A stretch of DNA of 64,000 bases from IMGVR_UViG_3300025121_000282:1-64000, one strand, 5' to 3'; shown: positions 19,578 through 42,624, numbered from the stretch's first letter. Translations and numbers: made by a program. Notes: generated by a model from the sequence alone, not told the origin.

Positions 19578-19832
19578 ATGTCACGTAGAGTCCTTATGGC
19601 AAAGTCTGTTGCAGACTCTTTTGTGCAGAGTTTGCAGGCCGAGCACGAAACTACATTTCCGCACCCTACAAATACGGTTATCAGTGTATTAGACAGTAAC
19701 ACCAGCACATTCATTGCTAGGTGTGGTGGGGGGATTACCGTGTCCTCCTATGGAGAAAACTCCACGTCTGTGACCACACGATCGGCTGATTTGCATAAAT
19801 TGGTGAACGCCGTACTTAAGGCACTAAAATGA
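19578..19832 (+). CDS. hypothetical protein
   Basis: 84-aa ORF coupled to the next gene. Confidence 0.6.
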   Translation: MSRRVLMAKSVADSFVQSLQAEHETTFPHPTNTVISVLDSNTSTFIARCGGGITVSSYGENSTSVTTRSADLHKLVNAVLKALK

Positions 19833-20950
19833 TACAGCGTATAACAAATTTGGCCAGTGTTGTTGCCAATCAGTTTGTGATAGCACGAGAGGGGACTGTA
19901 GACGACTTTGCTGAGTATGTGTTTGCTACTCGCACCAGCCCCATCTCACCTAATGAAATAGAAGAATACCTCAAAGCCGAATTTGGCGTAGAGGTCTTGG
20001 ATGCCCTGCCGAGCAAGGCGGGAGTAGCCAGATTTAGTATAGAAGACCCCGTAACTGTAAACATAGAAAAGCACAAGGCAAAAGACTATCCCATAGCAGA
20101 CTGCCCAGAGTACCAAACACACAACGGTAAAGAGGGAATAGTTATCGACGTTCAGGGCCAGGATGTAGTGGTAGAACTTAGTGATGGGAACAAGGTTTTG
20201 TTCCATGGTGGTATGAAGGCCAACAGTGGCTTAACTAAGCCCACTAAATCATACGACGCACCCCCACATGGGCCTATCGAAATAATATACACCAGGAATC
20301 CTGAAAATAAGCCTAGCCGTATGGAGGCTGTGCAGGAATACCTAGATAAAAAGCCAGGACAAAGGTCCCCTAACTATTACAGCGGCAATTTTTCCAATCC
20401 ACGTAGAACCCAGAGTGGAGATAAGTGGACGTTGAATGTCAGGACCCAACAGCGGGCGGACCAGCCGGGCGGTGAATTTGGATTTGCGGCTATGGACCCG
20501 TTTAATGGTGCAATTTGGTACATTGGGAGACCAAATAAGAGACCTGTAGGTTGGTTTGCTAAGCTGAAACAAATCGTAGAAAACACACAAAAAACTGCCA
20601 GTGTCAAGACTGCTGGTAACCTTCCAAATGGTTTTGCAAACAGTATTTCTACTGGTTTGAAGTCATTAGGTATATTTGCTAATGGCATGGATACCAAGAT
20701 TGTGCACGCTCGTGGATTTGAACTTGAAACTCCTAGTGTATTAGCATCCGTAATAAATAAACTTAGTGTGTCTTTTAGCGGGAATCAGTTTGAGGGTGGA
20801 ATGTCCGAACAAGTTGTTGTAAGTATTTTACACGACACTGAAACGGGACCTGTCACTTACAAAATCCCGGTGGGTAAGTTTGTGTTTGATGCAAACACAA
20901 ACCAAACCACGTTTGTACCTGTAAGTGGGAAAACGAAAGAGATACCGTAA
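19829..20950 (+). CDS. putative virion/head-associated protein
   Basis: Position in the block upstream of the terminase; SH3/KOW-like 'GIVIDVQGQDVVVEL'; carries KTAS/KTAG motifs. Confidence 0.45.
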   Translation: MIQRITNLASVVANQFVIAREGTVDDFAEYVFATRTSPISPNEIEEYLKAEFGVEVLDALPSKAGVARFSIEDPVTVNIEKHKAKDYPIADCPEYQTHNGKEGIVIDVQGQDVVVELSDGNKVLFHGGMKANSGLTKPTKSYDAPPHGPIEIIYTRNPENKPSRMEAVQEYLDKKPGQRSPNYYSGNFSNPRRTQSGDKWTLNVRTQQRADQPGGEFGFAAMDPFNGAIWYIGRPNKRPVGWFAKLKQIVENTQKTASVKTAGNLPNGFANSISTGLKSLGIFANGMDTKIVHARGFELETPSVLASVINKLSVSFSGNQFEGGMSEQVVVSILHDTETGPVTYKIPVGKFVFDANTNQTTFVPVSGKTKEIP

Positions 20951-21549
20951 TGGACATTTTTACCCCGCAGTACTCGGGCATAGATCAGGCTCTGAGCAGA
21001 GAACAGAATTTTTTCTTTATTAAGCCCGAAATGGCTAGACAGTCTAACATAGGGCCGTTTGCTCGGCTGTCTGCTACTGACACGCTAGTTAGAATGTCTG
21101 AAAGAGACTTATGGGCTGTGGAACCCACAATTGATGGAAAGTATGTTATTAAAAGATTGTTTGATGACTCTGAGGGACCAATACAAATAGGTACTACTAA
21201 AACAGCCGGTCTCAACTCTGAAAAATACTATGTGATAGCTACAGGTTTGCATGGTGGAGTTGTGGCTAAACGGGGCCCGTTTGATTTTGCAATAGCCAGT
21301 GACAAGTTGGACATACTTAAAAAGGTGTGGGGTGCATCGAGTATTATCCAGGTACCCGGCAGTCAGATCGATTTGAATAAGTATGGCTTGGGTGCCACAG
21401 GCGACCCAGTGTCTACGCCGGGGGCATCTAAGTTACACAGACTTACTTCAATGGTCGCTATGACTTCATCCAGGCTATTGGTTCAGCGCAGTGCTAGTGT
21501 GACCAGCCAAATTTATGATTACCATGGTAATCCATACAGGGTTGTGTGA
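20950..21549 (+). CDS. putative virion/head-associated protein
   Basis: Coupled ORF in the head block with KTAG and RSAS motifs. Confidence 0.4.
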   Translation: MDIFTPQYSGIDQALSREQNFFFIKPEMARQSNIGPFARLSATDTLVRMSERDLWAVEPTIDGKYVIKRLFDDSEGPIQIGTTKTAGLNSEKYYVIATGLHGGVVAKRGPFDFAIASDKLDILKKVWGASSIIQVPGSQIDLNKYGLGATGDPVSTPGASKLHRLTSMVAMTSSRLLVQRSASVTSQIYDYHGNPYRVV

Positions 21550-22046
21550 TGTCAGACCTATACAAGACAGTCGCCACAAACCACGTATTCAGAGTCGCTT
21601 CGTCTGCTACTGGTGGCACTGGCAGGGCCATACCCGATTCTTTTAACGGTGACCAACTGTCACTAAAGCACTTGGCTAAAGCCCAGTGGCAACTCTTGGT
21701 TGCACTGGGTCATGTACTTAGCGGGTATAGTACTATCAGTAAAATAAAATCCACCTCTATGTCTCCAGATGGTAAGTTGGGTGGGTATGGATATGTTATG
21801 GGCATCAGTAACATTCGTAAAGACTTGGCTGAGATTGTTGAAAAATTATCAACTATAACAGATACCATCCACGACGAGACAAATGGGCCTCATTGGAAGA
21901 ATCAGCCCAAAGATACTCAGAAAATTCTTGAAGAAAGTGACCAGCTGCTGTCCAACGGATTAGAAGCAGTTGCCGAGTCTGAGTATGCAGAAGAAGTTCT
22001 AAATTCCGTTGGGCCTAAGGATAGTGGGCATGAACAAAGACCTTAA
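21546..22046 (+). CDS. putative virion/head-associated protein
   Basis: Coupled ORF with N-terminal RVAS motif and a helical core. Confidence 0.4.
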   Translation: MMSDLYKTVATNHVFRVASSATGGTGRAIPDSFNGDQLSLKHLAKAQWQLLVALGHVLSGYSTISKIKSTSMSPDGKLGGYGYVMGISNIRKDLAEIVEKLSTITDTIHDETNGPHWKNQPKDTQKILEESDQLLSNGLEAVAESEYAEEVLNSVGPKDSGHEQRP

Positions 22047-24483
22047 AATAAACCTTGGCGGTGTCATTAATTTAGATGGTTTTGTAGACGTTTCTATGTC
22101 TAATTTGGATTGGCTTGATGTGGACCCGGAAAGTTATAGGGAACACACACAACTACCTCGACAGAATGATGTTGTCGACCAGCTGAGTGGGCTGTGGAAT
22201 GGCCCAGACGCCAGTCATGCGCCGCCTGTCAACACCTCTATATTGTATGCCCCCCCGGCCGGCAGGACAGCTGGTTTTAATCCGGAAGCTGTATTTAAAT
22301 ACACCAGACTTAGTATAGCCGCTGGGCACAAGGGTGCTGACTTATACAACAGAATCGCTAGTATCATAAACCAATTTGCCCCTGACTTTGTGTCTAGCCA
22401 CTCGCGCATAGCCTCTACGCCACATGACGAAAAATACACCGCATTTAAAGACACACTATCCAACATAATTGCTTCTGAGCTTGGACTGTTAGGGAAATTA
22501 TACCTATACGCAAGTGATTTTAGTAAGTGCGAGTCTGGGGAAATTTTTAAGTTTTCTAAATCTGTAGGGATTAAGGCTACGCGTCTTTTGGCTAAAGACA
22601 AGTGTACTGACTGTATTTTCAAGCAAAATAACAAGTGCAATCCGTCTGGAATGAGTCTACATTCCTCGTTATCACTTGATAATCAACTTTTATCAGAGTT
22701 GGGTGTGTCCAACCCTGTTTCGGATATCCGTGCCGCCATTGTTTCTCACCTGGACCCAGCACCTGTAGTAAAAACCTCACACACTCCTTTTCTCATTAAC
22801 AAACCAGTAAGCGTATCAGCCGCACAGGCTGACGAATTCCTAGACTCAATAGAAGCTCCCCAAGCTGTCAAAAACAGTGACAACGATCGGCTAACCACTG
22901 TTTTGTATCAAAAGGCATGTCTGGGCAGCATCCCTATAAAGGGTGAATACAACAAAGTAGCATACGAGTTAGACTCGCTACACATTCATCATATGATTGG
23001 GTCTCAGTCTTTCAAGGATTGTACGTCTGCTGCACATTCTTTGAGGAACTCCAAAAATTTCGCTCCATTCATTGCTAAGTCTATATGCAAGTGTGGTGAT
23101 GTTGCTGTCTGTAACAAAACAAACCTGTATATTCATGATGACAAAACCCAACCATACCCTGACTCCTTTGAGGCTGTAAGAACAACTATTGACGCTGCTA
23201 TAAACCACGGATACAAAAGCGAACAGTTAGGGAAAAAAGCAGCTAGTCTCCTTGGTATTACCAAATTTACGTCCTTGCAGATTCTGTCAAAATTTTTAAG
23301 TGTCGCAGAGTCAATAAAGGCACAGAAGTTCGCTTCGCCTGAGATAATAAATACGCCGGTTACACTTACAGAGGCTGATAGAGTGATAGAGTCTTCTCTA
23401 GAATCTATCGACAACAACAACACGCGCGCCCATCAAGTGTTTGTTTCCAAAATAAATGAACCCGTGATAAGCTATGCCACTATGCTGTCAGCCCGCGGTA
23501 TTTCAGTCTCGGATGGATTGAATAAGACTGCCAGTAAATTCCCTGACAGAGATACAGACAGTATTCTGAAGGAATCTAGAATACTGGAGGACTGGGGCAT
23601 CATAGGCAAGCACTACGTACACTCAAGGAACTCTGCCTCTGAGTGTAAGAGAACTAATGATTTTTTGACCAAAACAGGGTCAGCAGCAATAGTGACCGTG
23701 GTGGCTTCAGAAGCCTGTGGTGGCTGTGTGCTTAACAGGGTTGGGACATGTTCTGCCTTTAGAGCCAAACTGTCATCTACCCCGTACACACCTGAAGTAC
23801 TGGGTGTGATTTCTAGCGACGTAAAGTCAGTCAAAGCAAGCCGGGTAGCTTCAGTAGAGGCGGGGCCATCTATAGAAGGTGCCATTAAGACATTTGTCAC
23901 CAGGAATGACCCCGCCCCACGCCAGACTCCTATTTCTTTGAACTCTGGCGTGGCTTTTAGTGGTGTAACCAACACTAAAAAAGTTATTTCCGCTGCTGAC
24001 GTGTCTAGTACTGTTACTAAAGTTAGGGTAGCCATAAACAACGGGCTCCACGGTCACGCCCTGATGGAGTTTATTTCTAAACTAGACAAAGATGTGGTAG
24101 TTGCAGCCAAGAGCGACATTTTGCCCTTGGTAAAACTAAGTGGCAATCTAGGTGTTAATTACATCGACCCTGCTGCATACCCCGATTATGGTGTTTGTAA
24201 GGTTGGCCCCGCCCAGCACCAAAATCGTAAAGCCCTGTTGGTACTGGAGCAAGAGAAATGCACCGGTTGCACCATGAAAAATGCACTGGGCGATTGCACT
24301 AGATACAACAGAAGACTGGTGTCTGAGCCATCTGCTCGTACCAACGAATCGATTACGGTTCAGTCTGCCCCTATACTGAACCCTGTACACGCATTTGACT
24401 TGCAATCTACTCTAAGTATAGAATTGAATCAAGAGGTAAACACGCTGCCTCTTGAAATTAAAATGCGTGGCAACACAATGTGA
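22009..24483 (+). CDS. large protein with four internal Cys4 repeats, putative virion protein
   Basis: Four modules of the form G..(Y/H)...C-x~20-Cx(x)C-x5-8-C (the second is degenerate), plus many [RK]xA[SG] motifs. Confidence 0.55.
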   Translation: MGLRIVGMNKDLKINLGGVINLDGFVDVSMSNLDWLDVDPESYREHTQLPRQNDVVDQLSGLWNGPDASHAPPVNTSILYAPPAGRTAGFNPEAVFKYTRLSIAAGHKGADLYNRIASIINQFAPDFVSSHSRIASTPHDEKYTAFKDTLSNIIASELGLLGKLYLYASDFSKCESGEIFKFSKSVGIKATRLLAKDKCTDCIFKQNNKCNPSGMSLHSSLSLDNQLLSELGVSNPVSDIRAAIVSHLDPAPVVKTSHTPFLINKPVSVSAAQADEFLDSIEAPQAVKNSDNDRLTTVLYQKACLGSIPIKGEYNKVAYELDSLHIHHMIGSQSFKDCTSAAHSLRNSKNFAPFIAKSICKCGDVAVCNKTNLYIHDDKTQPYPDSFEAVRTTIDAAINHGYKSEQLGKKAASLLGITKFTSLQILSKFLSVAESIKAQKFASPEIINTPVTLTEADRVIESSLESIDNNNTRAHQVFVSKINEPVISYATMLSARGISVSDGLNKTASKFPDRDTDSILKESRILEDWGIIGKHYVHSRNSASECKRTNDFLTKTGSAAIVTVVASEACGGCVLNRVGTCSAFRAKLSSTPYTPEVLGVISSDVKSVKASRVASVEAGPSIEGAIKTFVTRNDPAPRQTPISLNSGVAFSGVTNTKKVISAADVSSTVTKVRVAINNGLHGHALMEFISKLDKDVVVAAKSDILPLVKLSGNLGVNYIDPAAYPDYGVCKVGPAQHQNRKALLVLEQEKCTGCTMKNALGDCTRYNRRLVSEPSARTNESITVQSAPILNPVHAFDLQSTLSIELNQEVNTLPLEIKMRGNTM

Positions 24484-28378: not shown

Positions 28379-28709
28379 CATCCAAGAATTAAACAACATC
28401 TTGGCAAGTATAAATGACATGTCTGCCAAGGCCCTAACTTTGTCTAGGGTACTTTTGGCCGAGGCCAAAGCATCTGATGATGCCACTACTGTAATACAAA
28501 CAAATATGTACGTAAGAATGCTGTCTGCAATGTTAAGTGGCTTGTCTAAACTTAGTCGCCACAAAATCTCTCCCATAAATGTACCCAATTATGTAAAAAA
28601 TGCCAGAGACAAAATGTTTTGGGTAGAAGCCAGAAGAATAGCATACAGCAAAAACAAAACTTCTGAAGTAGAAATTGAAAAGATATGGAAGGGGCTGACT
28701 CGTGCCTAA
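28350..28709 (+). CDS. hypothetical helical protein (start possibly ATG at 28371)
   Basis: Fills the gap to the portal gene. Confidence 0.6.
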   Translation: MLRMFCHMSNIQELNNILASINDMSAKALTLSRVLLAEAKASDDATTVIQTNMYVRMLSAMLSGLSKLSRHKISPINVPNYVKNARDKMFWVEARRIAYSKNKTSEVEIEKIWKGLTRA

Positions 28710-30363
28710 AAGTACAGATCAAGAAGGGCGCGTCGTCCGCACCATACTAACAAGTAATGTGAAAGTTGGCAAACCGTCTCGTAAAAACAGGCTAGCTGCC
28801 AACATCTCTATGGCGCAGAATTCTCAGTTCTATGATACTATCATGTCTGCGGACATGCTCGAATTGCCTCAACCGGGGCAAAACGAAGCCGCTGTAATCA
28901 GACACTTTTATGAGTATGACGAGTATGTTGGTGCTGCCATCGATATGCACACTCAGCTGCCTCTTTCAAAAATTAGGCTAGAGCAAGCTGAGTGCCCTGA
29001 TGTCGAGTTGTCTGAGAAGTCTTACAGATTTTTTTTTAAAATGTGTAAACGTATAAAATTGTTTAAACGTCTGGTTTCTATACTATTTGATTATAATCTC
29101 CATGGTGAGGCAGTTGTATGGGCGGAGGACAGTGCTGACTCTATGCCGTTAGACGTGCGGCACACAACCGAAAGATACATAAATGACTACGGAAAACCTG
29201 TAGAAGAACACATTGTTAGAGACGATGCGGACACTAGAGAAGTAGAGTGGTACAAAAAACATTACAAGGGTTGGGACAAAATTACCACTCTCCCACCTGA
29301 GTGTGTAGAAATAAAAACGTTTCCGTTTTCTAATTTTTCTTCAATAACCATACTACACGATGACCAGACGCGGGCTTTGGTTAACAGGGCTGACATAGAC
29401 CCGGTTTCCGCTCAGGCATACGATGCAATACCCCAAGAACTTAGACCCTATTTGACAGAATCAGATAGGATTCCACTTGGTACCGACCCGAATAAGGGGT
29501 CGTTTGTTTATCACCTAGCCAGGGCAAAATCTGATTATCAAGAACGTGGAGTACCTGTACTTAGGCGATGCCTGAAAACGTTAATTTATAGGGATAAGTT
29601 ACGTCAGGCCCAAACTCAGATCGCTTCCAGAGCTATGACCCCTAAGAGACTGATTTGGGCGGAAGACCTAAGCCCAGAACAGTTGGAAGACCTTCGGGAT
29701 CAGGTGGACATGTCCCTGATGGACCCTGATTTTAGTATTATCACCAACTATCAAGTCAACTGGGAGGAGTTAGGGGCTAGAGACCGTCTTTTAGACTTAG
29801 CATCGGAAGACGAATCCGCAAATAAAAGACTGGTGGCTGGACTCGGTATTACTGAGGGACTGATCACCGGAGAGGCCACCTACTCCGGTGACCGTATGCC
29901 CATAGAGGCAATCAACACCAAGTACATGCTTTTGCGTGAACACATTCAAGAGTATGTTCACGACTATTTATTTGAGCCCATAGCCAGAAAAAAGGGATTT
30001 GTATACATTGACGAGGACGGTGATGAGATAGCGGTGTACCCCACTATTGGGTTCACACGTATGGCACTCACTGATTCTCAGGATGCATATGACAAGCTTT
30101 ATAACCTGTACCAAAAGGGCTCCATTCCAATTAGTGTGATTTTAGACTTGCTTAACATTGAGCCTAGATACGCCAGAAAACAGTTGGAACAAGACCTGTT
30201 TACAGTAAATGACCCCAACTTCAACGAGGTACTCCGCTCCCTGTATGGAGAAATTGGTAGAGCTTTGGTGGAACAGTCTAATGCTGTAGCCAAAACGTCA
30301 GAATACCTTTCTTTGAAGCCTATAGCAAAAGAAGGGTCAGAAGAAGATAACAGGTTCAAGTAA
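28702..30363 (+). CDS. portal protein
   Basis: 553 aa, largely helical, in the canonical position between terL and the protease/capsid genes; 'EYVGAAIDMHTQLPLS' and 'GVPVLRRCLKTL' resemble large-phage portals. Confidence 0.72.
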   Translation: MPKSTDQEGRVVRTILTSNVKVGKPSRKNRLAANISMAQNSQFYDTIMSADMLELPQPGQNEAAVIRHFYEYDEYVGAAIDMHTQLPLSKIRLEQAECPDVELSEKSYRFFFKMCKRIKLFKRLVSILFDYNLHGEAVVWAEDSADSMPLDVRHTTERYINDYGKPVEEHIVRDDADTREVEWYKKHYKGWDKITTLPPECVEIKTFPFSNFSSITILHDDQTRALVNRADIDPVSAQAYDAIPQELRPYLTESDRIPLGTDPNKGSFVYHLARAKSDYQERGVPVLRRCLKTLIYRDKLRQAQTQIASRAMTPKRLIWAEDLSPEQLEDLRDQVDMSLMDPDFSIITNYQVNWEELGARDRLLDLASEDESANKRLVAGLGITEGLITGEATYSGDRMPIEAINTKYMLLREHIQEYVHDYLFEPIARKKGFVYIDEDGDEIAVYPTIGFTRMALTDSQDAYDKLYNLYQKGSIPISVILDLLNIEPRYARKQLEQDLFTVNDPNFNEVLRSLYGEIGRALVEQSNAVAKTSEYLSLKPIAKEGSEEDNRFK

Positions 30364-31465: not shown

Positions 31466-32032
31466 GTGGAAACACCCGCACCCAATGATGAGTACCATCC
31501 CGATTCCAGAGAATTGGGGAACCATTATAATGTGGGTGATTTTGTAGCTAGACAATTACCTGATGGCGGTATCACTGACGTAGTTGGCGTAATCACCGCC
31601 GTTCTCCGTAAAATTGGATTTGTAGACGTAGAGTTTCCTACAGGAAATGAGCGGATTTCCATTGTAGAAGTGTGGAAAGTACCTAAGGACTCCATATTTT
31701 ATGCCCCCGCTACGCTGAACACTTCCATGGAAACATGGGACACCTCTATGTCTAGATATCTAGATGGGGTTAATTCTGGGTATAGCTACGCTCACCCAAG
31801 AGTTAGCAGTGTTGTTTCGAAGCACATGTTTCGTACATACAGCCCTGTAGTCTCCTTTATTAAAAGGGCTTTCTCAGCGGGGCTTTCTTCAAAACAGATA
31901 ACTGATGTGCTTGGGCGTGTTTTACCTTCCAATTCATTTGTTGAAATGCAAGAATTGGTCGCACACGTCCATGGCGAAGTCTTTAGAAGCAAATTGCCTT
32001 TACTCCAAATGGATAATATAACGGTGAGTTAA
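31466..32032 (+). CDS. hypothetical head-module protein with SH3/KOW-like N-terminal fold
   Basis: 'VGDFVAR...GVITAV...VDVEFP'; coupled to the protease gene. Confidence 0.55.
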   Translation: METPAPNDEYHPDSRELGNHYNVGDFVARQLPDGGITDVVGVITAVLRKIGFVDVEFPTGNERISIVEVWKVPKDSIFYAPATLNTSMETWDTSMSRYLDGVNSGYSYAHPRVSSVVSKHMFRTYSPVVSFIKRAFSAGLSSKQITDVLGRVLPSNSFVEMQELVAHVHGEVFRSKLPLLQMDNITVS

Positions 32033-33498
32033 TGGGGTTTATACGAACGGCTGAAGCTGCTGTCATACACACGGGCTGGACTCGTGAGCAGTGGGGTCGT
32101 ATTCGTGACGAGGCAAAAGACCAGGGCGGCAATGACCGTTTGGCCTCCGTTAATGAAGAATTTAGGCACTTTGACCCTAGCAAGTATTTGTTATCTCATC
32201 TAACAATAATGTGTTCTGTTGATGTGGAAGAGTCTCCACTACCGTTAGGTAAATTCAACTCTTCAAAAATAAAGTCTTCTTCGCTAACTAAGTTTCTACC
32301 CGGCTACGGCATAACTAATCGCAATTTCTCAGATTTTTTAGTTAAGCCTGAACACTCTAAGTACGTGAATGGCAACGGTGACTGTTGGGAACGGAAGCTT
32401 TTACTCTCTGCGTACAAGACCTTTATAGGCGGGGCAAACTATTATGAACACTTACAGGTCCCGGAATTAAATAAGGGCATAATAGTAGATGCTGTCGCTC
32501 GCGATGTCGGGGACACAATTTACATCGACCTGTTGAAAGCAACTGATCGTAAGCACACATATATAACAGAAGACCTTGAGTCGGATGTGCTTAATACAGC
32601 AAGTATGGGGTGTAACGCTTCCTTTGCTATTTGTACTAGATGTGGAAACGTTGCTATAGAAGACACGGACGTCTGTGATTGCGTGTCTCAGGGCTATAAG
32701 CTCAGTTATTACACTGACAACGACATTCGCAGGATCGTGGCTGAGCTAATAGGCCACTGGTCCGACCCCAATTCTTGTGTATTTTTTGAGTCGTCATGGG
32801 TTCGCAATCCAGCCTTTAAAGGCGCTGTAAAACGCAAAATTTTGACCCCACTTGAGGTAAACTCCTCCTCTGGTGTCCCTATCACATTTCCCGAACTAAG
32901 GGTAGCCTCTTTAACGGCCACTCGGTCGGCCCGAGTTGCTAACTTAATGTGGCCCCTACTTGTTGGAAATGTTATGGCCGATGGTACTCCTCAAAAAGGA
33001 CAAGACACTCGGCCCGATGCTCTTAAAAAGTTATACCCACAAAAAACTGCCCCTCCTGCTGAACCCGTTGTGGAGGAGCCTGAGGAATCAGACCCATCCA
33101 CTAAAGAGGAACCAGCACCTCCTCCTGAAGATATTGCCCCGCAGCAGGAGGAGTCTGTAGACCCTCCTGTGGCTGAGCCAGAGCCAGAGCCTGTTGAAGA
33201 CAGGTCCCCCGTTGAGTTGGACATACAGGATGCCAAAGACGCTCTTCGTCAGACGCTCCTGGAGCAGGTTGTAGACGAACTCACAGACAAAAATAAAAAA
33301 GAGTACGTCCCTGATCCTAACCAAGATAACAATCTGTTTGCTACTGTAGCATTGAAGCACATAAATCGTGGTAGAGTAGCCTCAGTTTTGTTTAAATCTG
33401 AAAATGATGTGCATACCACTAAGTACATACAAGCCTTAGCATCAAAGATTGGTGCAGTGCACACCTCCAGACAACCGTCTGGAATTAGACGCCCGTGA
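32032..33498 (+). CDS. prohead (maturation) protease, HK97/herpes assemblin-like, with zinc-ribbon insert and acidic Pro-rich tail
   Basis: His 'YYEH', Ser 'TASMGC', 'ICTRCGN..CDC' insert and 'FESSWVRNPAF' (ExSxVxxPA-type motif). Position before the scaffold and capsid genes. Confidence 0.78.
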   Translation: MGFIRTAEAAVIHTGWTREQWGRIRDEAKDQGGNDRLASVNEEFRHFDPSKYLLSHLTIMCSVDVEESPLPLGKFNSSKIKSSSLTKFLPGYGITNRNFSDFLVKPEHSKYVNGNGDCWERKLLLSAYKTFIGGANYYEHLQVPELNKGIIVDAVARDVGDTIYIDLLKATDRKHTYITEDLESDVLNTASMGCNASFAICTRCGNVAIEDTDVCDCVSQGYKLSYYTDNDIRRIVAELIGHWSDPNSCVFFESSWVRNPAFKGAVKRKILTPLEVNSSSGVPITFPELRVASLTATRSARVANLMWPLLVGNVMADGTPQKGQDTRPDALKKLYPQKTAPPAEPVVEEPEESDPSTKEEPAPPPEDIAPQQEESVDPPVAEPEPEPVEDRSPVELDIQDAKDALRQTLLEQVVDELTDKNKKEYVPDPNQDNNLFATVALKHINRGRVASVLFKSENDVHTTKYIQALASKIGAVHTSRQPSGIRRP

Positions 33499-33515: not shown

Positions 33516-34454
33516 ATGTCTGATCGTAATCGTTCCACCTGGAGCCGGGCGGCTGCAACCAATCGTCAGGCCGACCCGTTCACAATGAACCAGACTCGCG
33601 TTCAGCCCAGTGAGGATGCCTATGCAAATGGGGACCCGTCAACTTGGGGTGAAGATGTGGACCACAGCAACATGTGGAAGAATGAGACACGTAATGAGAT
33701 CGGCCAGCCTGTGCCGCACTCTAACGTGATAGATTCCGCGCTGCAGGTAGAGGAAGCTGCCCGTGTTGCTGCCCAGAAAGCGGCAACAGCGGCAACTACT
33801 CCTCCCCCCGTAGACCCCACCATTTTTCAGTATCACCTGAAGAGAGCAAAGCTCGCAACTATGATTGCAGAGTCTATGCTTCCTGGTGGCACCTCCGACG
33901 AGGTTGTTGTGGCCTCAGCCGGACATCTGATGTACCTCCCGGACACGGCTCTTGCAGGGCTGAGAGAAGTTCAGCGTAATGCTGGTCTGGTTAAGTATGC
34001 CAAGGAAGAGGCACCCGCTCCCGAGGCTCCCGCTCCCGAGGTTGTGGCACCCGCTCCCGAGGCTCCCGCTCCTGTGAATGCCTCAATGGACTTTGACGCA
34101 GAATTAGAAGCAGCACTTTTTGCTGGTACAGAAGAAGGTCAGGGCGGAGATAATGGTATAGAACTGCCCTCTTGTGATCTTGGCCTTGAAGACCCGGCCG
34201 AGGGTGTAGACCCAATTATAGCAGCACTGTTTGAGCAGGCACTACCCGCCCCCGTAGTGCGTGCGGCCTCGGTTACTCGGACAGCTTCCCAACAGCCCCA
34301 GGCCCCTGCTACGCCGCAGCGGCTGGGTGCGGCGCCCAGAGCGAGAATGGCCTCTGGGGACGCAAACAGAGCGTCAGCTGACCTTTCGGCCCTTTGGAGT
34401 TCAGAGCCCGACGTGTCAGCCCACTTTGGGACCCCCATCAGCATCAAAGACTAA
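33516..34454 (+). CDS. probable capsid scaffolding protein
   Basis: Ala/Pro/Glu-rich low-complexity protein between the protease and the decoration/capsid genes; strong GGAG ribosome-binding site. Confidence 0.6.
   Translation: MSDRNRSTWSRAAATNRQADPFTMNQTRVQPSEDAYANGDPSTWGEDVDHSNMWKNETRNEIGQPVPHSNVIDSALQVEEAARVAAQKAATAATTPPPVDPTIFQYHLKRAKLATMIAESMLPGGTSDEVVVASAGHLMYLPDTALAGLREVQRNAGLVKYAKEEAPAPEAPAPEVVAPAPEAPAPVNASMDFDAELEAALFAGTEEGQGGDNGIELPSCDLGLEDPAEGVDPIIAALFEQALPAPVVRAASVTRTASQQPQAPATPQRLGAAPRARMASGDANRASADLSALWSSEPDVSAHFGTPISIKD
34011..34072 (+). repeat. 26-bp direct repeat (period 36) encoding APAPEAPAP
   Basis: gcacccgctcccgaggctcccgctcc at 34011-34036 and 34047-34072. Confidence 0.9.
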
Positions 34455-34618: not shown

Positions 34619-35239
34619 ATGGCAGGTCAGTCTAATGCTGATTTCAAGGGAAGCAGCGATCGACTTCGAATTTTGTATCGAGGCCACTCGAATTCTAGTT
34701 CGAAGCTAACGGAAGATGCTTACACTAACACCAACCCTCCGATTGCGGCGCTTGCTGGAGTTGCCAGCAGCACCCTGACCGGAATCACCAAGACTGGTGT
34801 TCTTGGCTCCTCGGTGGCTGTCACCCGTCCGGATGCTGGTGGTGGCTACATTGGTGGCCCTCCGTCAAATGAGGCTCTCGAAGGCAACTTCCGCCCCCTC
34901 GGTCTCTTCCGTCGTGACGCCAATGGCCTCCCGAATGAGAACGACCCGGGCGTTGCATCGGAAAAGACTGCTTACCTCCACGGCGGTGGCCAGTATGGAT
35001 GCCAGTTGTACGAATCCAAGATTCTAAACACTGGCGCCGCACTTTCGCCGTCTTGGACCAGTGGTGTTCTGGTTTATTGCTCCCGCAATGGTCTCATCAC
35101 CACGCTGGACAACGCCAACAACACCCTGGAGCGGGTTGCTGCTCACAGCATGTCTCCTGCCACTGGCACCGTGATGGGCGTGGTTCTTATGGGCCCGACT
35201 TCGGCAATTGCTGAGGTTACGCTCGACCTTCACGTTTAA
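34619..35239 (+). CDS. putative head decoration/cement protein (paralogue 1)
   Basis: Gly-rich beta protein upstream of the capsid gene with an AAGGAG ribosome-binding site; clearly homologous to the next ORF. Confidence 0.6.
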   Translation: MAGQSNADFKGSSDRLRILYRGHSNSSSKLTEDAYTNTNPPIAALAGVASSTLTGITKTGVLGSSVAVTRPDAGGGYIGGPPSNEALEGNFRPLGLFRRDANGLPNENDPGVASEKTAYLHGGGQYGCQLYESKILNTGAALSPSWTSGVLVYCSRNGLITTLDNANNTLERVAAHSMSPATGTVMGVVLMGPTSAIAEVTLDLHV

Positions 35240-35250
35240 TTGGAGGTCAC

Positions 35251-36036
35251 ATGAGCTACTTTGGAATCTCAAATCAGGATTTTAAGGGGCTAGCCGGTCG
35301 GCTTCGCATCCTTTATCGGGGCCATGGCAACTGCATGGCAGTCCTGGTGGATGACGCCTACACCCAGGCTAACCCGGGTCAGGCCATCGTATCAGATGAA
35401 GCCACCCCCACTTCCAGCACCTTGACGGGTGTTACGAAGCGTGGTGTGCTTTCTGGTTCGGTAGCTTTCACTCGTCCTTCCACATCAGGCAACGTGGCTG
35501 TGGATAACATGGTAGGTGGCCCTCGTCGTCGTGGTGGTTCCAGCATCGGGGCCGCTAACGCTGAACAGGCCGTAGATGGCACCAACGCCCACGCAGAAGA
35601 TGCACGGACGCACGTAATTGGCCTGTTTATCAACGATGCAATGGGCAACCAGAGCTTCGACAATCAGGCAGGCGTTGCATCGGGTAAGATTGCGTATCTT
35701 TCTGGTCCCGTTGGGTCGGTGGGCGTCCAGGTCTACGAGACCCGGCAGCAAATTGACTGGGCCCGTGGCGGGGCTGGGGCGGCTGTCTCTTGGGGCAGTG
35801 GTCAGTATGTGTACGGGTCTATAAACGGACTTGTCACCAACCTTGTTCGTGATGCTCTGGAGTCCTATTCCACTGGCGTACTGAATGATGCCGGTAATGG
35901 ACTTACTGATGCAGCCGGTGGAGCAGTGGCCGCTCCGTCAGTGTCCATCATGGGAACCACTAAGTTCGGGCCTACTGCGGCTTTGCCAGAGGTCTGTTTT
36001 GACATGCGCTTGTTCAAGTACCGTACGGTCGCTTAA
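35251..36036 (+). CDS. putative head decoration/cement protein (paralogue 2)
   Basis: Shares 'DFKG...RLRILYRGH', 'STLTG(I/V)TK.GVL' and 'GVAS.K.AYL' with 34619..35239; GGAGG ribosome-binding site. Confidence 0.6.
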   Translation: MSYFGISNQDFKGLAGRLRILYRGHGNCMAVLVDDAYTQANPGQAIVSDEATPTSSTLTGVTKRGVLSGSVAFTRPSTSGNVAVDNMVGGPRRRGGSSIGAANAEQAVDGTNAHAEDARTHVIGLFINDAMGNQSFDNQAGVASGKIAYLSGPVGSVGVQVYETRQQIDWARGGAGAAVSWGSGQYVYGSINGLVTNLVRDALESYSTGVLNDAGNGLTDAAGGAVAAPSVSIMGTTKFGPTAALPEVCFDMRLFKYRTVA

Positions 36037-36061: not shown

Positions 36062-36937
36062 ATGTCAGTAAGTAACGCAGTGAAGCAGCAGAAGATTGCT
36101 GAACTCATTGGATCTCAGGGCGGCCGTGACATTATCGCCCGTTCAATGATTCAGCCCCTTCGGTCCCGTCGTGACTATTTCGCTGTAGGGCGTAAGTCAC
36201 TCCACGTCGAGCAGCTTCCCGATGGTGCGCTCCCGATTTATGACAAGGATGTGGACGTCGTCGCCTACATCGTGTCGGAAGAGGGTGATAACATCGTTGC
36301 TGTGCAGAAGCCTCGCCGGGTTCATTTCCCGACCTTCGAGATTGCTGCCAACCCTGAGATTCCCCTGTCTCAGATCCGCCAGCGCCGGTTCGACGTGATC
36401 GACCGGTCGCAGGACGCGGCCAGAAGCCAGATTCAGGCTGCTGAAGACCAGCGGTACTTTGCTACCCTGGATTCGGTTGCTGTTGACGGCTACGACAATG
36501 TGTCGGGCTCGGCTGCACGTGACGTTCAGGTCATTGCTCCCATCTCCCCCAGCGTTCTTGCTGAGGCCTTCTCGGAGATTGAGCAGAACGACCTCCAGGT
36601 CAGCCGGATGTTCTTCAATGCGAAGGACTACAGCGACGTCCGCAAGTTCGGCAGAGACATCCTGGACATCGAGTCCCAGGCCGTCCTGCTGAAGACCGGT
36701 CTGATGGCGCAGCTTTGGGGCGCGCAGATCATGATCAGCCGACTGGTCCCCCAGGGCTTCGTTTATATCGTCTGCGAGCCGCTGTACTTGGGGAGAATGC
36801 CAGTACGCACAGAACTCACCGTAATATCCGCTGATGACCCTAGACGCCGTATGATAGGCTTCTCGGTCTTCGAAGAGATTGGCATTGGCGTGTATAACCC
36901 CGCTGGCGTCACCCGTCTCGTGGTACAGCGCGGTTAA
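36062..36937 (+). CDS. major capsid protein (HK97-like fold, no delta domain)
   Basis: 291 aa with the strongest C/G-ending codon bias in the window; 'VEQLPDGALPIYDKD' and 'FPTFEIAANPEI' resemble large-phage capsid proteins. Last gene of the head operon, followed by a hairpin. Confidence 0.8.
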   Translation: MSVSNAVKQQKIAELIGSQGGRDIIARSMIQPLRSRRDYFAVGRKSLHVEQLPDGALPIYDKDVDVVAYIVSEEGDNIVAVQKPRRVHFPTFEIAANPEIPLSQIRQRRFDVIDRSQDAARSQIQAAEDQRYFATLDSVAVDGYDNVSGSAARDVQVIAPISPSVLAEAFSEIEQNDLQVSRMFFNAKDYSDVRKFGRDILDIESQAVLLKTGLMAQLWGAQIMISRLVPQGFVYIVCEPLYLGRMPVRTELTVISADDPRRRMIGFSVFEEIGIGVYNPAGVTRLVVQRG

Positions 36938-36971
36938 TCTCAGCGGTCTTCCAGACCGTTTTTCGTTCATA

Positions 36972-40242: not shown

Positions 40243-40677
40243 ATGACTACCATTGCAGATGCCATTTTAAGAGTAGCTTCGGTTTTACAAATCTCTGCTG
40301 ATAAACCTGTTGACAGGCTGCAAGTTATAATAGACAAAATTACTGAAGAGATGAAGATCAGTGACAACCCTGGTCTTGAACGTTTTCCAGCCGTTGTACG
40401 GTATCTAAGAGACCACAGAACGTCTGAATCCCTAGCCACAGACGTTCTGCATAAGATGTTCCCTAAAGACATGTCCCGTGATGTCAAGAACACTGTGTAC
40501 ACCAATAGGTACAACCCTAAAGTTGGTGACCATGTTAAGATTGTTGGTGGCAACTACAATGGGCATGTTGGTACCGTTCAAAGCCTGCACGAAGACAAAG
40601 TTATAATTGTTCTCAATAAACCAGTTACTGTTACGTATCATTCAGTATCAGTCCCTGACGTTTACATACATCGATAA
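40243..40677 (+). CDS. KOW-motif protein
   Basis: C-terminal 'KVGDHVKIVGGNYNGHVGTVQS'; N-terminal 'ILRVAS'. Confidence 0.65.
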   Translation: MTTIADAILRVASVLQISADKPVDRLQVIIDKITEEMKISDNPGLERFPAVVRYLRDHRTSESLATDVLHKMFPKDMSRDVKNTVYTNRYNPKVGDHVKIVGGNYNGHVGTVQSLHEDKVIIVLNKPVTVTYHSVSVPDVYIHR

Positions 40678-40685
40678 GCCACAAC

Positions 40686-41078
40686 ATGTCTCTTTTGAAT
40701 AAACTGAGATCCATCAGAACAGAGATGGCTCACGCTGCTCAAGAGGTGTATGACTCTTGGGACCAGGATGAAGATGGGGACGACCCAAAATTTGGCTCTG
40801 GTGGTATTTGTGACCGCATTTCTGACGCACTGGCTAGCGTAGTTGTCAACGCCATAGAAGACGTGGAAGTGCACGAGGGTGGGCAAGATGGGGACGACCA
40901 CTCGTGGTTAATCGTTATGAATAATGCCGAGGCCTACTCAGTGGACATACCACCCAGGGTGTACGAGACTGGTGGTGGGTACTCCTGGAAGAAAATTCCG
41001 GATGTTGTGTTCAAGTCTGACGACATTGTAATAGATAACATTCCTATTGGAGATGTTATAAATTTACTTGAGGATTGA
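40686..41078 (+). CDS. acidic hypothetical protein
   Basis: 130-aa ORF coupled to the next gene. Confidence 0.65.
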   Translation: MSLLNKLRSIRTEMAHAAQEVYDSWDQDEDGDDPKFGSGGICDRISDALASVVVNAIEDVEVHEGGQDGDDHSWLIVMNNAEAYSVDIPPRVYETGGGYSWKKIPDVVFKSDDIVIDNIPIGDVINLLED

Positions 41079-41683
41079 AAATGACACCAGACAACATACT
41101 TGAAAAATACACAAATAAAATTACAACCTACCTTAAGGACCCAAAACGGTCCAGAAACATTTTGGACCAAGTACTTATAAACCTGCATACCCAAATATTT
41201 GAAGAGTTACCAGTCTCAGTCTCTATTACAAAAAAAGAACATATAGACCTCGGCCACGGTAGGGTTGATGGATACGAAGACATAAAAGTACCCGGTGTAC
41301 CCTCTAGGTGTCTCTTGAAGTTAAGTTATACTATCGACATCCCAGAGGTACCGGGTTCGGTTGAACACGAAGCAGTAAGTGACATAATTAAGTTTCTGTA
41401 TGCTATTTTGCATGAAGAGGACCAGCTAGAGAAAATAGTTGAGCACACTATAGAGAACGACGATGAAAACTTTCCTGGGACCATAGACTGTGGCAGGGGC
41501 ATTTCTGCTGCTGTTGTGTACCAATTGCACACGTTGGAAGCAGATACTTTCATTGGCCACCAGGACCAATCTAAAATTTCTGTGAAGCTTGACATACACT
41601 TAAACCTTGATCCAGAAACTAAGTTTCATAAAGATGAATACCCCCACTTGAAGCCCGAAAGTCATAGAAGAGTGGAACCATAA
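41075..41683 (+). CDS. hypothetical protein (probable start ATG 41080 region)
   Basis: 202-aa ORF, acidic and His-rich. Confidence 0.6.
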   Translation: MKMTPDNILEKYTNKITTYLKDPKRSRNILDQVLINLHTQIFEELPVSVSITKKEHIDLGHGRVDGYEDIKVPGVPSRCLLKLSYTIDIPEVPGSVEHEAVSDIIKFLYAILHEEDQLEKIVEHTIENDDENFPGTIDCGRGISAAVVYQLHTLEADTFIGHQDQSKISVKLDIHLNLDPETKFHKDEYPHLKPESHRRVEP

Positions 41684-41742
41684 CGAAACCCGTGTTCGTT
41701 GTATAATTATAGCTGACGTGTAATAACAACACAGGAAAACCA

Positions 41743-42624
41743 ATGTCAGAGATTGAATACGAACGCGGCGTGTTTTTTACTTATGTGGTGCGCAGTGTGT
41801 TTACTGATGGCCAACAGGACATGCGGTTCAGTGTAGGTGACGAATTCGAGTACGACGGGACAATACTTCGTATTGGTAATGAAGAGACTACGTCACAAAG
41901 AATTAGAGGCGCCATCAAACACGGGTGGGCCACCAGACTGGGAAGCCCTAAGGTTGCGTTACAAGCACCCAGGGCCAACATAAAGATCTCTGCTGCACTT
42001 CCTGAAAACCGGGCTAAAGGTATGATGGAAATGACTGTGGAGAGATTTGAAGACGAGCGGGTGGTGGGTACTGTTGATGGCATCCGCGCTGCCGCTAAAA
42101 ACCCGAGTGGTAACATAGGGAAAGACCGTCAGCCCGCTCCTGCAGTTCGTACGGCATCAGAACTCAACTTTGTTGGTGATTCGGTGAGTGCTCCTGTCTC
42201 TCGTGGGGACAGAGTTGTAGCTACAATAAGCACCCCTCTTAAGACCTCATTTAACACAGAAACTGGTAAGACTGTGGACTTGAATACCGGCAAGCCCATT
42301 TTATCTGTGGATGAGGGTAAAAGAATAAATAGTGGCTACAGCGAAGCAGAAATTGCTAACATAAACAGAGACACTGCTCCTTCTCGGGTGGTTGAGCGTG
42401 CATCTAGACCCTCTGTTGCCCGTCCAACAGTTAAGGCACCAGTCCAGGCCGCTCCTACAGAATTGGAGTGGGACCTTAGTGCCAATCCTATGAAGAGAAT
42501 TGGAGACATGAGAAAGCAGTTTGCTGACCGTCCCGATGTTCTTTTACAGCTTTACAGCATAGAAACGCCTAAAATTAAGGCCATGATGGTGGAAAGATTT
42601 CCAGGGGTGTCATTTCCTAAGTGA
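41743..42624 (+). CDS. hypothetical protein with folded termini and low-complexity linker
   Basis: 293 aa; TATAAT at 41702 and an AGGA ribosome-binding site upstream. Confidence 0.7.
   Translation: MSEIEYERGVFFTYVVRSVFTDGQQDMRFSVGDEFEYDGTILRIGNEETTSQRIRGAIKHGWATRLGSPKVALQAPRANIKISAALPENRAKGMMEMTVERFEDERVVGTVDGIRAAAKNPSGNIGKDRQPAPAVRTASELNFVGDSVSAPVSRGDRVVATISTPLKTSFNTETGKTVDLNTGKPILSVDEGKRINSGYSEAEIANINRDTAPSRVVERASRPSVARPTVKAPVQAAPTELEWDLSANPMKRIGDMRKQFADRPDVLLQLYSIETPKIKAMMVERFPGVSFPK

What the first reader, a model, noticed from the sequence alone, without database searches (positions are those of the whole stretch)
19829..42624. Recurrent [RK]-x-A-[SGA] motif in head-module proteins: candidate maturation cleavage code
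Seen directly: KTAS/KTAG (19829), KTAG/RSAS (20950), RVAS (21546), RTAG/RIAS x2/KAAS/KTAS/RVAS (22009), RLAA (portal), KMAS (31049), RLAS/RVAS x2/RVAN (protease), RVAA/RAAS/RTAS/RMAS (scaffold), RVAS (40243), RTAS (41743). By eye it is much rarer in the replication enzymes, and it often borders low-complexity linkers. Herpesvirus assemblin, structurally related to HK97-type prohead proteases, cleaves after Ala, typically Ala-Ser. Inference: the 32032 protease cuts at [RK]-x-A|S, so the motif marks proteins processed inside the prohead.
Basis: partly seen in the sequence, partly recalled or inferred. Interest (0 to 1): 0.7.

Follow-up and report, generated by a model that had tools for sequence, protein, structure and literature searches.

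The report
Candidate head-protease cleavage motif R-x-A-S
The short peptide motif Arg/Lys-x-Ala-Ser is strongly over-represented in the head-assembly proteins of this 315-kb uncultivated jumbo phage and its many relatives, and it most likely marks where a herpesvirus-like head protease cuts, although no cleavage has been measured.

Summary
In an unbiased scan of about 24,400 three-residue patterns, R-x-A-S ranks first in the head module: 14 seen against 2.3 expected, P=1.9e-7. The rest of the 315-kb genome sits at expectation (18 against 23), and no other 21-gene block reaches this density.

The core is [KR]-x-A-S; the Gly and Lys-Ala forms are at chance here.

It replicates independently. K-x-A-S is among the top patterns in the head modules of phage G, Tunturi_5 and LR745208, and in pooled IMG/VR relatives (129 against 26).

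Site placement fits a cleavage role:
- R-T-A-S is present in 38 of 40 scaffold homologues, at the junction of a low-complexity linker and a conserved C-terminal tail.
- Sites flank the protease fold on both sides.

The protease domain models confidently, and its best structural matches are herpesvirus proteases and T4 gp21.

Best reading: a prohead-protease recognition and cleavage motif, with a release-site and maturation-site layout like that of herpesviruses. Cleavage itself and the exact bond (Ala|Ser) remain inferred. I found no published report of this motif for this clade.

The parts
32032..33498 (+). Prohead protease precursor, 488 aa. The assemblin/gp21-like fold spans about residues 45-280, followed by a Pro/Glu-rich linker and a helical C-terminal part.
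   Evidence: PHROG 18299 head maturation protease, E=3e-7. AF2 model of residues 40-290 has pLDDT 90.6. Best PDB matches are VZV protease Z=11.1, T4 gp21 Z=9.7 and HCMV protease Z=8.2; Foldseek's top hits are T4 gp21 and pseudorabies pUL26N. H140, S191 (in S-M-G), C201, C204, C215 and E238 are invariant in 76 homologues. It is the single copy in the genome.
32137..32148 (+). RLAS, protease residues 36-39. Candidate N-terminal propeptide site just before the fold begins.
   Evidence: The aligned column is R/K-x-A-[S/A/T] with Ala nearly invariant in 30-51 homologues. 47 of 71 database homologues carry such a site 8-30 residues before the fold. It lies in a pLDDT<50 segment of the full-length model.
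32899..32910 (+). RVAS, protease residues 290-293. Candidate release site at the C-terminal end of the protease fold.
   Evidence: The last helix of the model ends at about residue 278 and confidence collapses after about 280. K.AS and R.AS are the two most enriched of all 3-residue patterns in the C-terminal extensions of 71 homologues (60 against 9.6; 48 against 7.5). Phage G gp19 and Tunturi_5 gp331 carry KVAS at the same place.
33373..33384 (+). RVAS, protease residues 448-451. The cut would fall 38 residues from the C-terminus.
   Evidence: It lies in a low-confidence segment. The position is not conserved in the alignment.
33516..34454 (+). Presumed scaffolding protein, 312 aa. It has an N-terminal conserved part, an Ala/Pro/Glu-rich linker and a conserved C-terminal tail.
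   Evidence: The gene lies between the protease and the decoration/MCP genes. Homologues are present in 46 related loci at about 32% identity. No family match in Pfam or PHROGs, so the scaffold role is inferred from position and architecture.
34260..34289 (+). RAAS (residues 249-252) and RTAS (255-258) in the scaffold. Candidate maturation site at the junction of linker and tail; the two cuts would release 61 and 55 C-terminal residues.
   Evidence: In the family alignment the column reads R 38/40, T 37/40, A 40/40, S 36/40. It directly precedes the conserved tail ..TRTVGTRP..GG..LSxLWxSAPDV..FG.
34344..34355 (+). RMAS, scaffold residues 277-280. The cut would release the last 33 residues.
   Evidence: Specific to this phage; not a conserved column.
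22009..24483 (+). 824-aa protein of unknown function with six [KR]xAS sites (residues 115, 133, 410, 440, 506, 612). Candidate head-internal or ejection protein.
   Evidence: It is the most motif-enriched protein in the whole genome (6 against 0.83 expected). The syntenic 614-aa protein of LR745208 is similar only at the C-terminus (E=2e-6), yet it is also motif-rich.
19829..22046 (+). Three small genes upstream (19829-20950, 20950-21549, 21546-22046) carrying KTAS 255, RSAS 180 and RVAS 16.
   Evidence: 21546 has a homologue at the same position in LR745208. No family annotation.
28702..30363 (+). Portal protein, 553 aa, with RLAA at residues 30-33.
   Evidence: PHROG 16240 portal, E=3e-27. 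Phage G portal has KMAS 55 and KIAS 625. There is no conserved motif column at the portal N-terminus in relatives.
31049..31453 (+). 134-aa protein with RCAS 28 and KMAS 49.
   Evidence: In 32 homologues the column at residue 30 has Ala in 31 of 32 and R/K in 21 of 32.
34619..36036 (+). Two paralogous decoration-like proteins with no [KR]xAS.
   Evidence: 39% identical to each other. Both match the single gene preceding the MCP in LR745208. Phage G gp26 at that position is annotated as capsid decoration.
36062..36937 (+). Major capsid protein, 291 aa, no delta domain and no [KR]xA[SGA].
   Evidence: PHROG 2522, E=4e-51. 65% identical to the LR745208 MCP and 38% to phage G gp27. Relatives have KTAAGRxKLAAS in the N-arm; this phage does not.
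40243..42624 (+). Downstream genes with single sites: RVAS at residue 10 of 40243-40677, and RTAS at residue 136 of 41743-42624.
   Evidence: 41743 has weak homologues in 17 loci. Function unknown.

Best explanation
[KR]-x-A-S is the recognition and cleavage motif of the phage's single assemblin-fold prohead serine protease (32032-33498). In this phage the motif is mostly R-[V/I/T/A/L/M]-A-S; in relatives it is mostly K-T-A-S.

Proposed sequence of events:
1. The protease is made as a 488-aa precursor and is co-assembled into the prohead with the scaffold.
2. It frees its catalytic domain by cutting at RLAS (36) and RVAS (290).
3. It severs the scaffold core from its conserved capsid-binding C-terminal tail at RAAS/RTAS (249/255), and possibly at RMAS (277), so the scaffold can leave.
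4. It trims or fragments other proteins packaged in the prohead: 22009, 31049, 21546, 40243, and perhaps the portal N-terminus.

The most likely scissile bond is Ala|Ser.

Shown here: the motif's enrichment, its restriction to the head module, its conservation and placement, the protease fold, and the invariant Ser and His.
Inferred: that the motif is cut, by this enzyme, and at that bond.
For: Statistics in this genome:
- R.AS ranks first of about 24,400 patterns in the head module (14 against 2.3).
- Genome-wide, [KR].AS is 19 against 4.8 in the head module and 41 against 46 elsewhere, and the four most enriched proteins in the genome are all head-module proteins.
- No other 21-gene block matches the density.
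- The only paralogous pair in the module is the two decoration-like genes, which carry no [KR]xAS, so paralogy does not explain it. Codon choice does not explain it either.

Independent replication:
- K.AS is among the top patterns in the head loci of LR745208, Tunturi_5 and phage G.
- In pooled non-redundant proteins upstream of the MCP in IMG/VR loci, K.AS is 129 against 26 and R.AS is 91 against 21.

Residue logic typical of a protease subsite:
- At P1 only Ala is enriched (4.7x); every other residue is at or below 1.5x.
- At P1', Ser (4.7x) exceeds His, Ala and Gly (about 2x).
- At P3, K and R (4.9x and 4.4x).
- At P2, Thr.

Placement:
- R-T-A-S occurs in 38 of 40 scaffolds, exactly at the linker/tail junction.
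- Sites flank the protease fold.
- All three protease sites lie in pLDDT<50 segments.

Enzyme: assemblin/gp21 fold. S191 and H140 are invariant. The genome has one copy of this protease and no ClpP.

Precedent: herpesvirus assemblins cut after Ala at a release site and at a maturation site that removes the capsid-binding tail. In PrV these are YLQA-T and VQA-S, the latter removing 37 residues (PMC4498786).
Against: - There is no biochemical or proteomic evidence for cleavage in this phage or in any relative that I could read. Gonzalez 2020 on phage G is not held.
- A structure-based test of protease plus scaffold residues 240-290 gave no verdict.
- The conserved RTAS block could be conserved for binding and not for cutting.
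- The MCP, the usual prime substrate, has no motif here.
- Sites in the protease C-terminal extension are not positionally conserved.
- Actinophage relatives (I3, E3) show no K/R.AS enrichment; they have only R-T-A-G and K-T-A-G near their C-termini.
- Fold does not determine specificity: T4 gp21 has the same fold and cuts after Glu.
Confidence: 0.68

Rival explanations
1. The motif is a conserved docking or targeting element, not a cleavage site. Examples would be a capsid-targeting or scaffold/MCP/portal-binding peptide, or an exosite that recruits proteins to the protease or the prohead interior.
For: The best-conserved instance (RTAS) sits inside a longer conserved block, RTASTRTVGTRP. Relatives' MCP N-arms carry the conserved KTAA/KLAA in a structural element. 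Head-restricted enrichment would also be expected for a targeting signal.
Against: - Instances occur at non-homologous positions in unrelated proteins and in fast-evolving linkers.
- The strict requirement for Ala followed by small residues is typical of an S1/S1' pocket.
- The sites bracket the protease fold exactly where autoprocessing is expected.
Confidence: 0.12
2. The motif is cut, but by another enzyme (a host protease or a different phage protease), or at a bond other than Ala|Ser, for example after the Arg/Lys.
For: The scissile bond is not determined by any result here. Basic residues are common P1 residues of trypsin-like host proteases.
Against: - The genome has one assemblin-like protease and no ClpP.
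- The motif is kept across hosts as different as Lysinibacillus (phage G) and Acidobacteriota (Tunturi_5). That argues for a phage-encoded specificity that travels with the protease family.
- Ala and Ser are as tightly constrained as K/R.
Confidence: 0.1
3. R-x-x-S is a phosphorylation (basophilic kinase-type) or other modification site on head proteins.
For: Arg at -3 from a Ser matches generic basophilic kinase consensus. This rests on my own knowledge and was not tested.
Against: At conserved columns Ser is replaced by Ala or Gly, which cannot be phosphorylated. Examples: the protease N-terminal site has S 18 and A 12; scaffold column 178 has S 18 and A 8; actinophages have RTAG. Ala at -1 is as constrained as Ser. 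No kinase was looked for.
Confidence: 0.04
4. Chance or compositional artefact of Ala/Ser/Arg-rich head proteins, found by post-hoc motif picking.
For: Head proteins at 32-36 kb are GC-rich and Ala-rich.
Against: - Expectations were computed per protein from each protein's own composition and by shuffling.
- The unbiased scan puts R.AS first, and it survives Bonferroni correction.
- The same motif class emerges independently in three relatives and in pooled loci.
Confidence: 0.02

Closest known systems
Herpesvirus assemblin (pUL26/VP24 family) with release (R) and maturation (M) sites
   Same: - The same protease fold: VZV protease Z=11.1, HCMV Z=8.2, PrV pUL26N Foldseek probability 0.98.
- A motif with Ala followed by Ser.
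- One site at the C-terminal end of the protease fold, and one near the scaffold C-terminus just upstream of a conserved tail. The herpes M-site removes the MCP-binding tail (PMC4498786).
   Different: - P3 is Lys/Arg here, not Val/Leu/Ile; [VLI].AS is not enriched.
- Protease and scaffold are separate genes with unrelated C-termini, not nested in-frame genes. In the actinophage relatives I3 and E3 the protease is fused to a long C-terminal extension.
- There is an extra conserved site before the fold.
- An invariant four-Cys cluster lies next to the catalytic Ser.
- No sequence-level family match.
- Cleavage is not demonstrated.
T4 gp21 and phiKZ gp175 / SPN3US gp245 prohead proteases and their Glu-specific codes (L/I-x-E; S/A/G-x-E; A-x-E)
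   Same: - The same fold (T4 gp21 Z=9.7; Foldseek top hit).
- The same logic of a short motif recurring in scaffold, protease, portal and many internal head proteins of a large phage (PMC10052503 for SPN3US).
- Autoprocessing of the protease.
   Different: - The motif is entirely different. No x-x-E pattern is enriched in the head module.
- The MCP of this phage has no propeptide and no motif.
- hhalign against T4 gp21 is not significant.
Phage G gp19, Tunturi_5 gp331 and mycobacteriophage cluster C / Rhodococcus E3 prohead proteases
   Same: True homologues of the window's protease (tblastn E 1e-8 to 2e-51), with homologous MCPs. Phage G and Tunturi_5 head loci show the same K-x-A-S enrichment, with KVAS just after the protease fold.
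   Different: - The phage G and Tunturi_5 proteases are short (300 and 287 aa) and lack the long C-terminal extension.
- Actinophage homologues are 895-1408 aa fusions without K/R.AS enrichment.
- I could not find published cleavage sites for any of them.

Membership tests
Assemblin / T4 gp21 / HK97-type prohead serine protease (fold superfamily) | Herpesvirus-protease-like beta-barrel fold | tested here: met
   AF2 model of residues 40-290 has pLDDT 90.6 and pTM 0.86. An exhaustive structural search ranks VZV protease (Z 11.1), T4 gp21 (9.7) and HCMV protease (8.2) first, above unrelated folds at Z<=6.8. Foldseek's top eight hits are T4 gp21, PrV and KSHV proteases, although all have E>1e-3.
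Assemblin / T4 gp21 / HK97-type prohead serine protease (fold superfamily) | Conserved catalytic Ser and His at equivalent positions | tested here: inconclusive
   S191 (in S-M-G) and H140 (in E-H) are invariant in 27-76 homologues. Their order and spacing (His, then Ser 51 residues later) resemble my recollection of T4 gp21. hhalign to T4 gp21 aligns only the N-x-N helix just upstream of the His and is not significant (probability 0.8%). Residue-level structural superposition was not available.
Assemblin / T4 gp21 / HK97-type prohead serine protease (fold superfamily) | Sequence membership in a curated protease family (Pfam S21/S77/S78 and the like) | tested here: not met
   No Pfam match at E<=0.1. 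No PDB sequence match with a single sequence or a profile. The only match is PHROG 18299 'head maturation protease', E=3e-7.
Assemblin / T4 gp21 / HK97-type prohead serine protease (fold superfamily) | Gene sits in the head module between the portal and the scaffold/MCP | tested here: met
   Gene order is TerL, portal, three small genes, protease, scaffold-like, two decoration-like genes, MCP. The same order is seen in related loci.
Herpesvirus-type Ala|Ser processing with R- and M-sites | Substrate motif with Ala at P1 and Ser at P1' | tested here: inconclusive
   The motif x-A-S preceded by K/R is strongly enriched and conserved. The cut itself and its position cannot be read from sequence.
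Herpesvirus-type Ala|Ser processing with R- and M-sites | Hydrophobic P3 (V/L/I-x-A|S) | tested here: not met
   P3 is K/R (4.9x and 4.4x), with Ile secondary at 3.5x in relatives. [VLI].AS is not enriched in the window (12 against 9.2).
Herpesvirus-type Ala|Ser processing with R- and M-sites | Site at the end of the protease domain, and a site upstream of a conserved C-terminal scaffold tail | tested here: met
   RVAS 290 lies about 12 residues after the last modelled helix. RTAS occurs in 38 of 40 scaffolds at the linker/tail junction.
Herpesvirus-type Ala|Ser processing with R- and M-sites | Protease and scaffold share a C-terminus (nested in-frame genes) | tested here: not met
   They are separate adjacent genes. 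Neither alignment shows the scaffold tail motif in the protease C-terminus.
T4/phiKZ-type Glu-specific prohead processing | Recurrent x-x-Glu motif (L/I-x-E, S/A/G-x-E, A-x-E) in head proteins | tested here: not met
   Head-module counts are at expectation: [LI].E 70 against 58.7; [SAG].E 84 against 90.2; A.E 30 against 31.5. None is among the top patterns.

The most novel reading that the evidence does not exclude
A very large, environmentally widespread clade of jumbo phages (phage G, Tunturi_5 and hundreds of 230-512-kb IMG/VR genomes) matures its heads with herpesvirus-style logic: an assemblin-fold protease that cuts after Ala at [KR]-x-A|S, with release-type sites flanking the enzyme and a maturation-type site that detaches the scaffold from its capsid-binding tail. 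If so, this is the closest phage counterpart of the herpesvirus protease/scaffold system. It would also give a sequence rule for predicting the processed, head-internal proteome of uncultivated jumbo phages.
Probability: 0.45. Interest if true: 0.65.

Novelty: new variant of a known kind. Interest (0 to 1): 0.55.

Why it matters
Prohead proteases and their short cleavage codes are known for T4 (L/I-x-E), phiKZ and SPN3US ((S/A/G)-x-E, A-x-E), and herpesviruses (A|S).

If the reading is right, this clade would add a new code in phages, and one resembling the herpesvirus code. The clade includes the largest cultivated phage and hundreds of soil and freshwater jumbo-phage genomes. At least 859 protease clusters at 50% identity belong to the family.

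That would have three uses:
- It would strengthen the evolutionary link between the head-maturation machinery of tailed phages and herpesviruses at the level of substrate logic, beyond shared fold.
- It would give a simple predictor of which unannotated proteins are packaged and processed in the head, that is, candidate ejection proteins.
- It is directly testable with existing isolates (phage G, Tunturi_5) or with recombinant protein.

Tried and rejected
- The full-length protease model from a 27-sequence alignment was poor (pLDDT 50) and its fold search was uninformative. It was replaced by a domain model built on 76 database homologues.
- Complex prediction of the protease domain with scaffold residues 240-290 gave no verdict (score 0.01, controls not run). 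This is not evidence either way.
- Pfam on ten head proteins gave no hits. PDB sequence searches with a single sequence and a profile gave nothing relevant. hhalign against T4 gp21 was not significant.
- The megablast search against the phage collection found nothing.
- Literature: no paper was found that reports cleavage sites for phage G-like phages. Gonzalez et al. 2020 (J Mol Biol; PMC7316594) is not held. A search for the genome length found nothing.
- Considered and rejected:
  - DNA-level repeat: codons at the sites are diverse.
  - Paralogy: the only paralogous pair carries no [KR]xAS.
  - Glu-type codes.
  - Herpes-like hydrophobic P3.
  - ClpP as an alternative protease: absent.
- Excess of sites in the first 50 residues: 7 of 32 against 14% expected by length. 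I counted this by hand; it is not significant and is not claimed.

Full report
**Context.** The window is the first 64 kb of a 314,886-bp virus record from IMG/VR. All long ORFs lie on the + strand.

PHROG searches place the following genes in the region:
- large terminase, 24999-28199
- portal, 28702-30363
- head maturation protease, 32032-33498
- major capsid protein (MCP), 36062-36937

The region 19829-42624 is flanked on both sides by replication genes. Upstream are ligase, RecD/ExoV-like helicase, UvsX, SbcCD, clamp, clamp loader and primase. Downstream are helicase, DnaB, primase and DNA polymerase.

The MCP and protease have homologues in several phages:
- the uncultured 485-kb phage LR745208 (MCP 65% identical)
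- Tunturiibacter phage Tunturi_5 (42%)
- Bacillus/Lysinibacillus phage G (38%)
- more distantly, cluster C mycobacteriophages and Rhodococcus phage E3

[RK]xA[SGA] occurs 32 times in the 21 head-module proteins (7,279 aa). Per-protein shuffles give 13.6 +/- 3.6, and none of 500 shuffles reached 32.

In the head module the top pattern is R-x-A-S: 14 observed against 2.34 expected, P=1.9e-7, or about 0.005 after Bonferroni correction. It is not among the top patterns in the other 440 proteins.

Genome-wide results:
- [KR]xAS is 19 against 4.8 in the head module and 41 against 46 elsewhere. The four most enriched proteins in the whole genome are 22009-24483, the scaffold-like protein, the protease and 31049-31453.
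- No other block of 21 consecutive genes reaches the head module's density.
- The large baseplate and tail-fibre proteins at 236-300 kb are at baseline.
- The only paralogous pair in the module, the two decoration-like genes, carries no [KR]xAS.
- The 19 sites use all Arg, Ala and Ser codon families, so the constraint is on the protein.

In this phage R-x-A-S carries the signal. R-x-A-A is weak (7 against 2.6), K-x-A-S is weak (5 against 2.5), and the Gly forms are at expectation.

**Replication in relatives.** The same unbiased scan on 40-kb head loci gives K-x-A-S among the top patterns each time:

| Relative | Observed | Expected |
|---|---|---|
| LR745208 | 18 | 4.8 |
| Tunturi_5 | 14 | 3.6 |
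| phage G | 14 | 3.5 |

A scan of IMG/VR with an MCP alignment returned more than 570 relatives. I kept 80 loci, from contigs of up to 512 kb. After clustering proteins at 60% identity, the proteins encoded upstream of the MCP show K.AS at 129 against 26 and R.AS at 91 against 21. Apart from poly-Gln and other Gln-rich low-complexity patterns, K.AS is the strongest pattern.

Position-by-position scans show:
- P1: Ala only (4.7x); no other residue exceeds 1.5x.
- P1': Ser (4.7x), then His, Ala and Gly (about 2x).
- P3: Lys and Arg (4.9x and 4.4x), then Ile (3.5x).
- P2: a strong preference for Thr.

**Where the sites sit.**

Scaffold:
- The scaffold-like protein (33516-34454) has homologues in 46 loci at about 32% identity.
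- In their alignment one column reads R 38/40, T 37/40, A 40/40, S 36/40.
- This column lies exactly where a Gln/Glu/Ala-rich linker ends and a conserved C-terminal tail of about 60 residues begins (..RTASTRTVGTRP..GG..LSxLWxSAPDV..FG).
- The window protein has RAAS and RTAS there (residues 249 and 255), plus RMAS at 277.
- Further K-T-A-S columns are conserved at about residues 90 and 113-126 of the relatives.

Protease:
- An R/K-x-A-[S/A/T] column with nearly invariant Ala lies about 14 residues before the fold begins; in the window it is RLAS at 36.
- RVAS 290 lies about 12 residues after the last modelled helix.
- In 71 intein-free database homologues from different 50%-identity clusters, K.AS and R.AS are the two most enriched of all patterns in the C-terminal extensions: 60 against 9.6 and 48 against 7.5.
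- All three window sites fall in low-confidence, probably disordered segments of the full-length model.

Other proteins:
- The 824-aa protein 22009-24483 has six [KR]xAS sites. Its syntenic counterpart in LR745208 is alignable only at the C-terminus (E=2e-6) yet also carries many such sites. The motif therefore recurs at non-homologous positions.

**The enzyme.** Pfam and PDB sequence searches give nothing.

A model of residues 40-290 built on 76 homologues is confident (pLDDT 90.6). An exhaustive structural search ranks varicella-zoster virus protease (Z 11.1), T4 gp21 (Z 9.7) and HCMV protease (Z 8.2) first. Foldseek's best hits are T4 gp21 and the pseudorabies and KSHV proteases.

H140 and S191 (in S-M-G) are invariant, together with a four-Cys cluster and E238. 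I could not show residue-level equivalence to known catalytic residues.

The genome has one copy of this protease and no ClpP.

**Interpretation.** The most economical reading is that [KR]-x-A-S is the cleavage motif of this protease, in a layout that parallels herpesviruses. There, autoproteolysis at a release site frees the protease, and cleavage at a maturation site near the scaffold C-terminus removes the capsid-binding tail. In PrV these sites are YLQA-T and VQA-S, and 37 residues are removed (PMC4498786).

Here the equivalent cuts would release:
- a catalytic domain of about 254 residues (39-292);
- the last 33-61 residues of the scaffold.

The Ala|Ser bond is inferred from the strict small-residue pattern and from the herpesvirus analogy. 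It is not shown.

Differences from herpesviruses:
- a basic residue at P3, not a hydrophobic one;
- separate protease and scaffold genes;
- an extra conserved site before the fold.

Unlike T4, phiKZ and SPN3US, no Glu-type motif is enriched (PMC10052503).

The MCP of this phage has neither a delta domain nor a motif. Relatives carry KTAAGRxKLAAS in the N-arm, which this phage lacks, so MCP processing is open.

Actinophage relatives fuse the protease to a C-terminal extension that brings the whole protein to 895-1408 aa. They show no K/R.AS enrichment, only R-T-A-G-R and K-T-A-G-G near the C-termini of two adjacent proteins. This may be a diverged version of the maturation site.

**Rivals.**
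- A non-cleaved docking or targeting motif cannot be excluded, especially for RTAS, which is embedded in a conserved block.
- Cleavage by another enzyme or at another bond is possible but is disfavoured. The motif travels with the protease family across very different hosts.
- A phospho-acceptor reading is contradicted by Ser-to-Ala and Ser-to-Gly replacement at conserved columns.
- Chance and composition are excluded.

**Limits.**
- Gene calls are my own greedy longest-ORF calls, so start codons are approximate.
- In the pooled counts, orthologues below 60% identity are not independent.
- The scaffold role of 33516-34454 and the head location of 19829-24483 are inferred from position and motif load.
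- The complex prediction gave no verdict.

**Verdict.** It would be a new variant of a known kind of system, directly testable in phage G or Tunturi_5 or with recombinant proteins.

Noticed in passing
window 24999-28199: The large terminase is 1066 aa, against 639 aa in LR745208. Only residues 27-119 and 575-1060 align, leaving an insert of about 455 aa that looks like an intein. PHROG 9666 matches residues 247-429, and the same PHROG also matches the UvsX-like gene 9174-10433.
   Followed up: partly
window 37316-40189: A 957-aa ORF right after the MCP matches a LAGLIDADG homing endonuclease (residues 127-314), an HNH endonuclease (626-740) and methyltransferase-like fragments. It is conserved at the same place in LR745208 (1229 aa, 37% identity). 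It may be a host protein interrupted by inteins or homing elements.
   Followed up: no
window 45576-48407: The DnaB-like helicase ORF is 943 aa, but the DnaB match covers only residues 656-908. A short piece (620-668) matches a terminase PHROG that probably contains intein sequence. This is possibly another intein.
   Followed up: no
protease homologues P0011-P0151; loci L007, L008, L012, L031, L041: Many homologues of the prohead protease are 900-1500 aa with two or three matched stretches. The breaks fall just before the invariant E139-H140 and near C201, which suggests inteins inserted at the presumed active site of a head protease. This also points independently to these residues as the functional centre.
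   Followed up: partly
window 32032-33498, residues 191-215: An invariant Cys cluster (C194 nearly invariant; C201, C204 and C215 invariant) directly follows the invariant Ser191 (S-M-G-C...C-x-x-C...C). It looks like a zinc-ribbon-like insertion in an assemblin-type fold.
   Followed up: no
window 34619-35239 and 35251-36036: These are two tandem paralogues (39% identity) of the single gene that precedes the MCP in LR745208. Phage G's gene at that position, gp26, is the capsid decoration protein. Neither paralogue carries [KR]xAS.
   Followed up: partly
window 32001-36000 and 56001-60000: G+C is about 52% in these two stretches, against 42-46% elsewhere in the window. The first stretch covers the protease, scaffold and decoration genes, which are rich in Ala, Pro and Gly.
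   Followed up: no
window 36942-37009: Two terminator-like hairpins (36942-36960 and 36972-37009) lie in the 380-bp gap immediately after the MCP stop codon.
   Followed up: partly
L084 (phage I3) 10075-14301; L085 (phage E3) 11638-14325: In the actinophage relatives the protease is fused to a very long C-terminal extension (1408 and 895 aa in total) with no separate scaffold gene. The protease and the preceding large protein both end with R-T-A-G-R-like motifs about 20-45 residues from the C-terminus.
   Followed up: partly
window 36062-36937, residues 17-30: 42-45 of 48 relatives have KTAAGRxKLAAS in the MCP N-arm. The window's MCP has GSQGGRDIIARS instead, so it has lost both [KR]xA[AS] elements.
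   Followed up: partly
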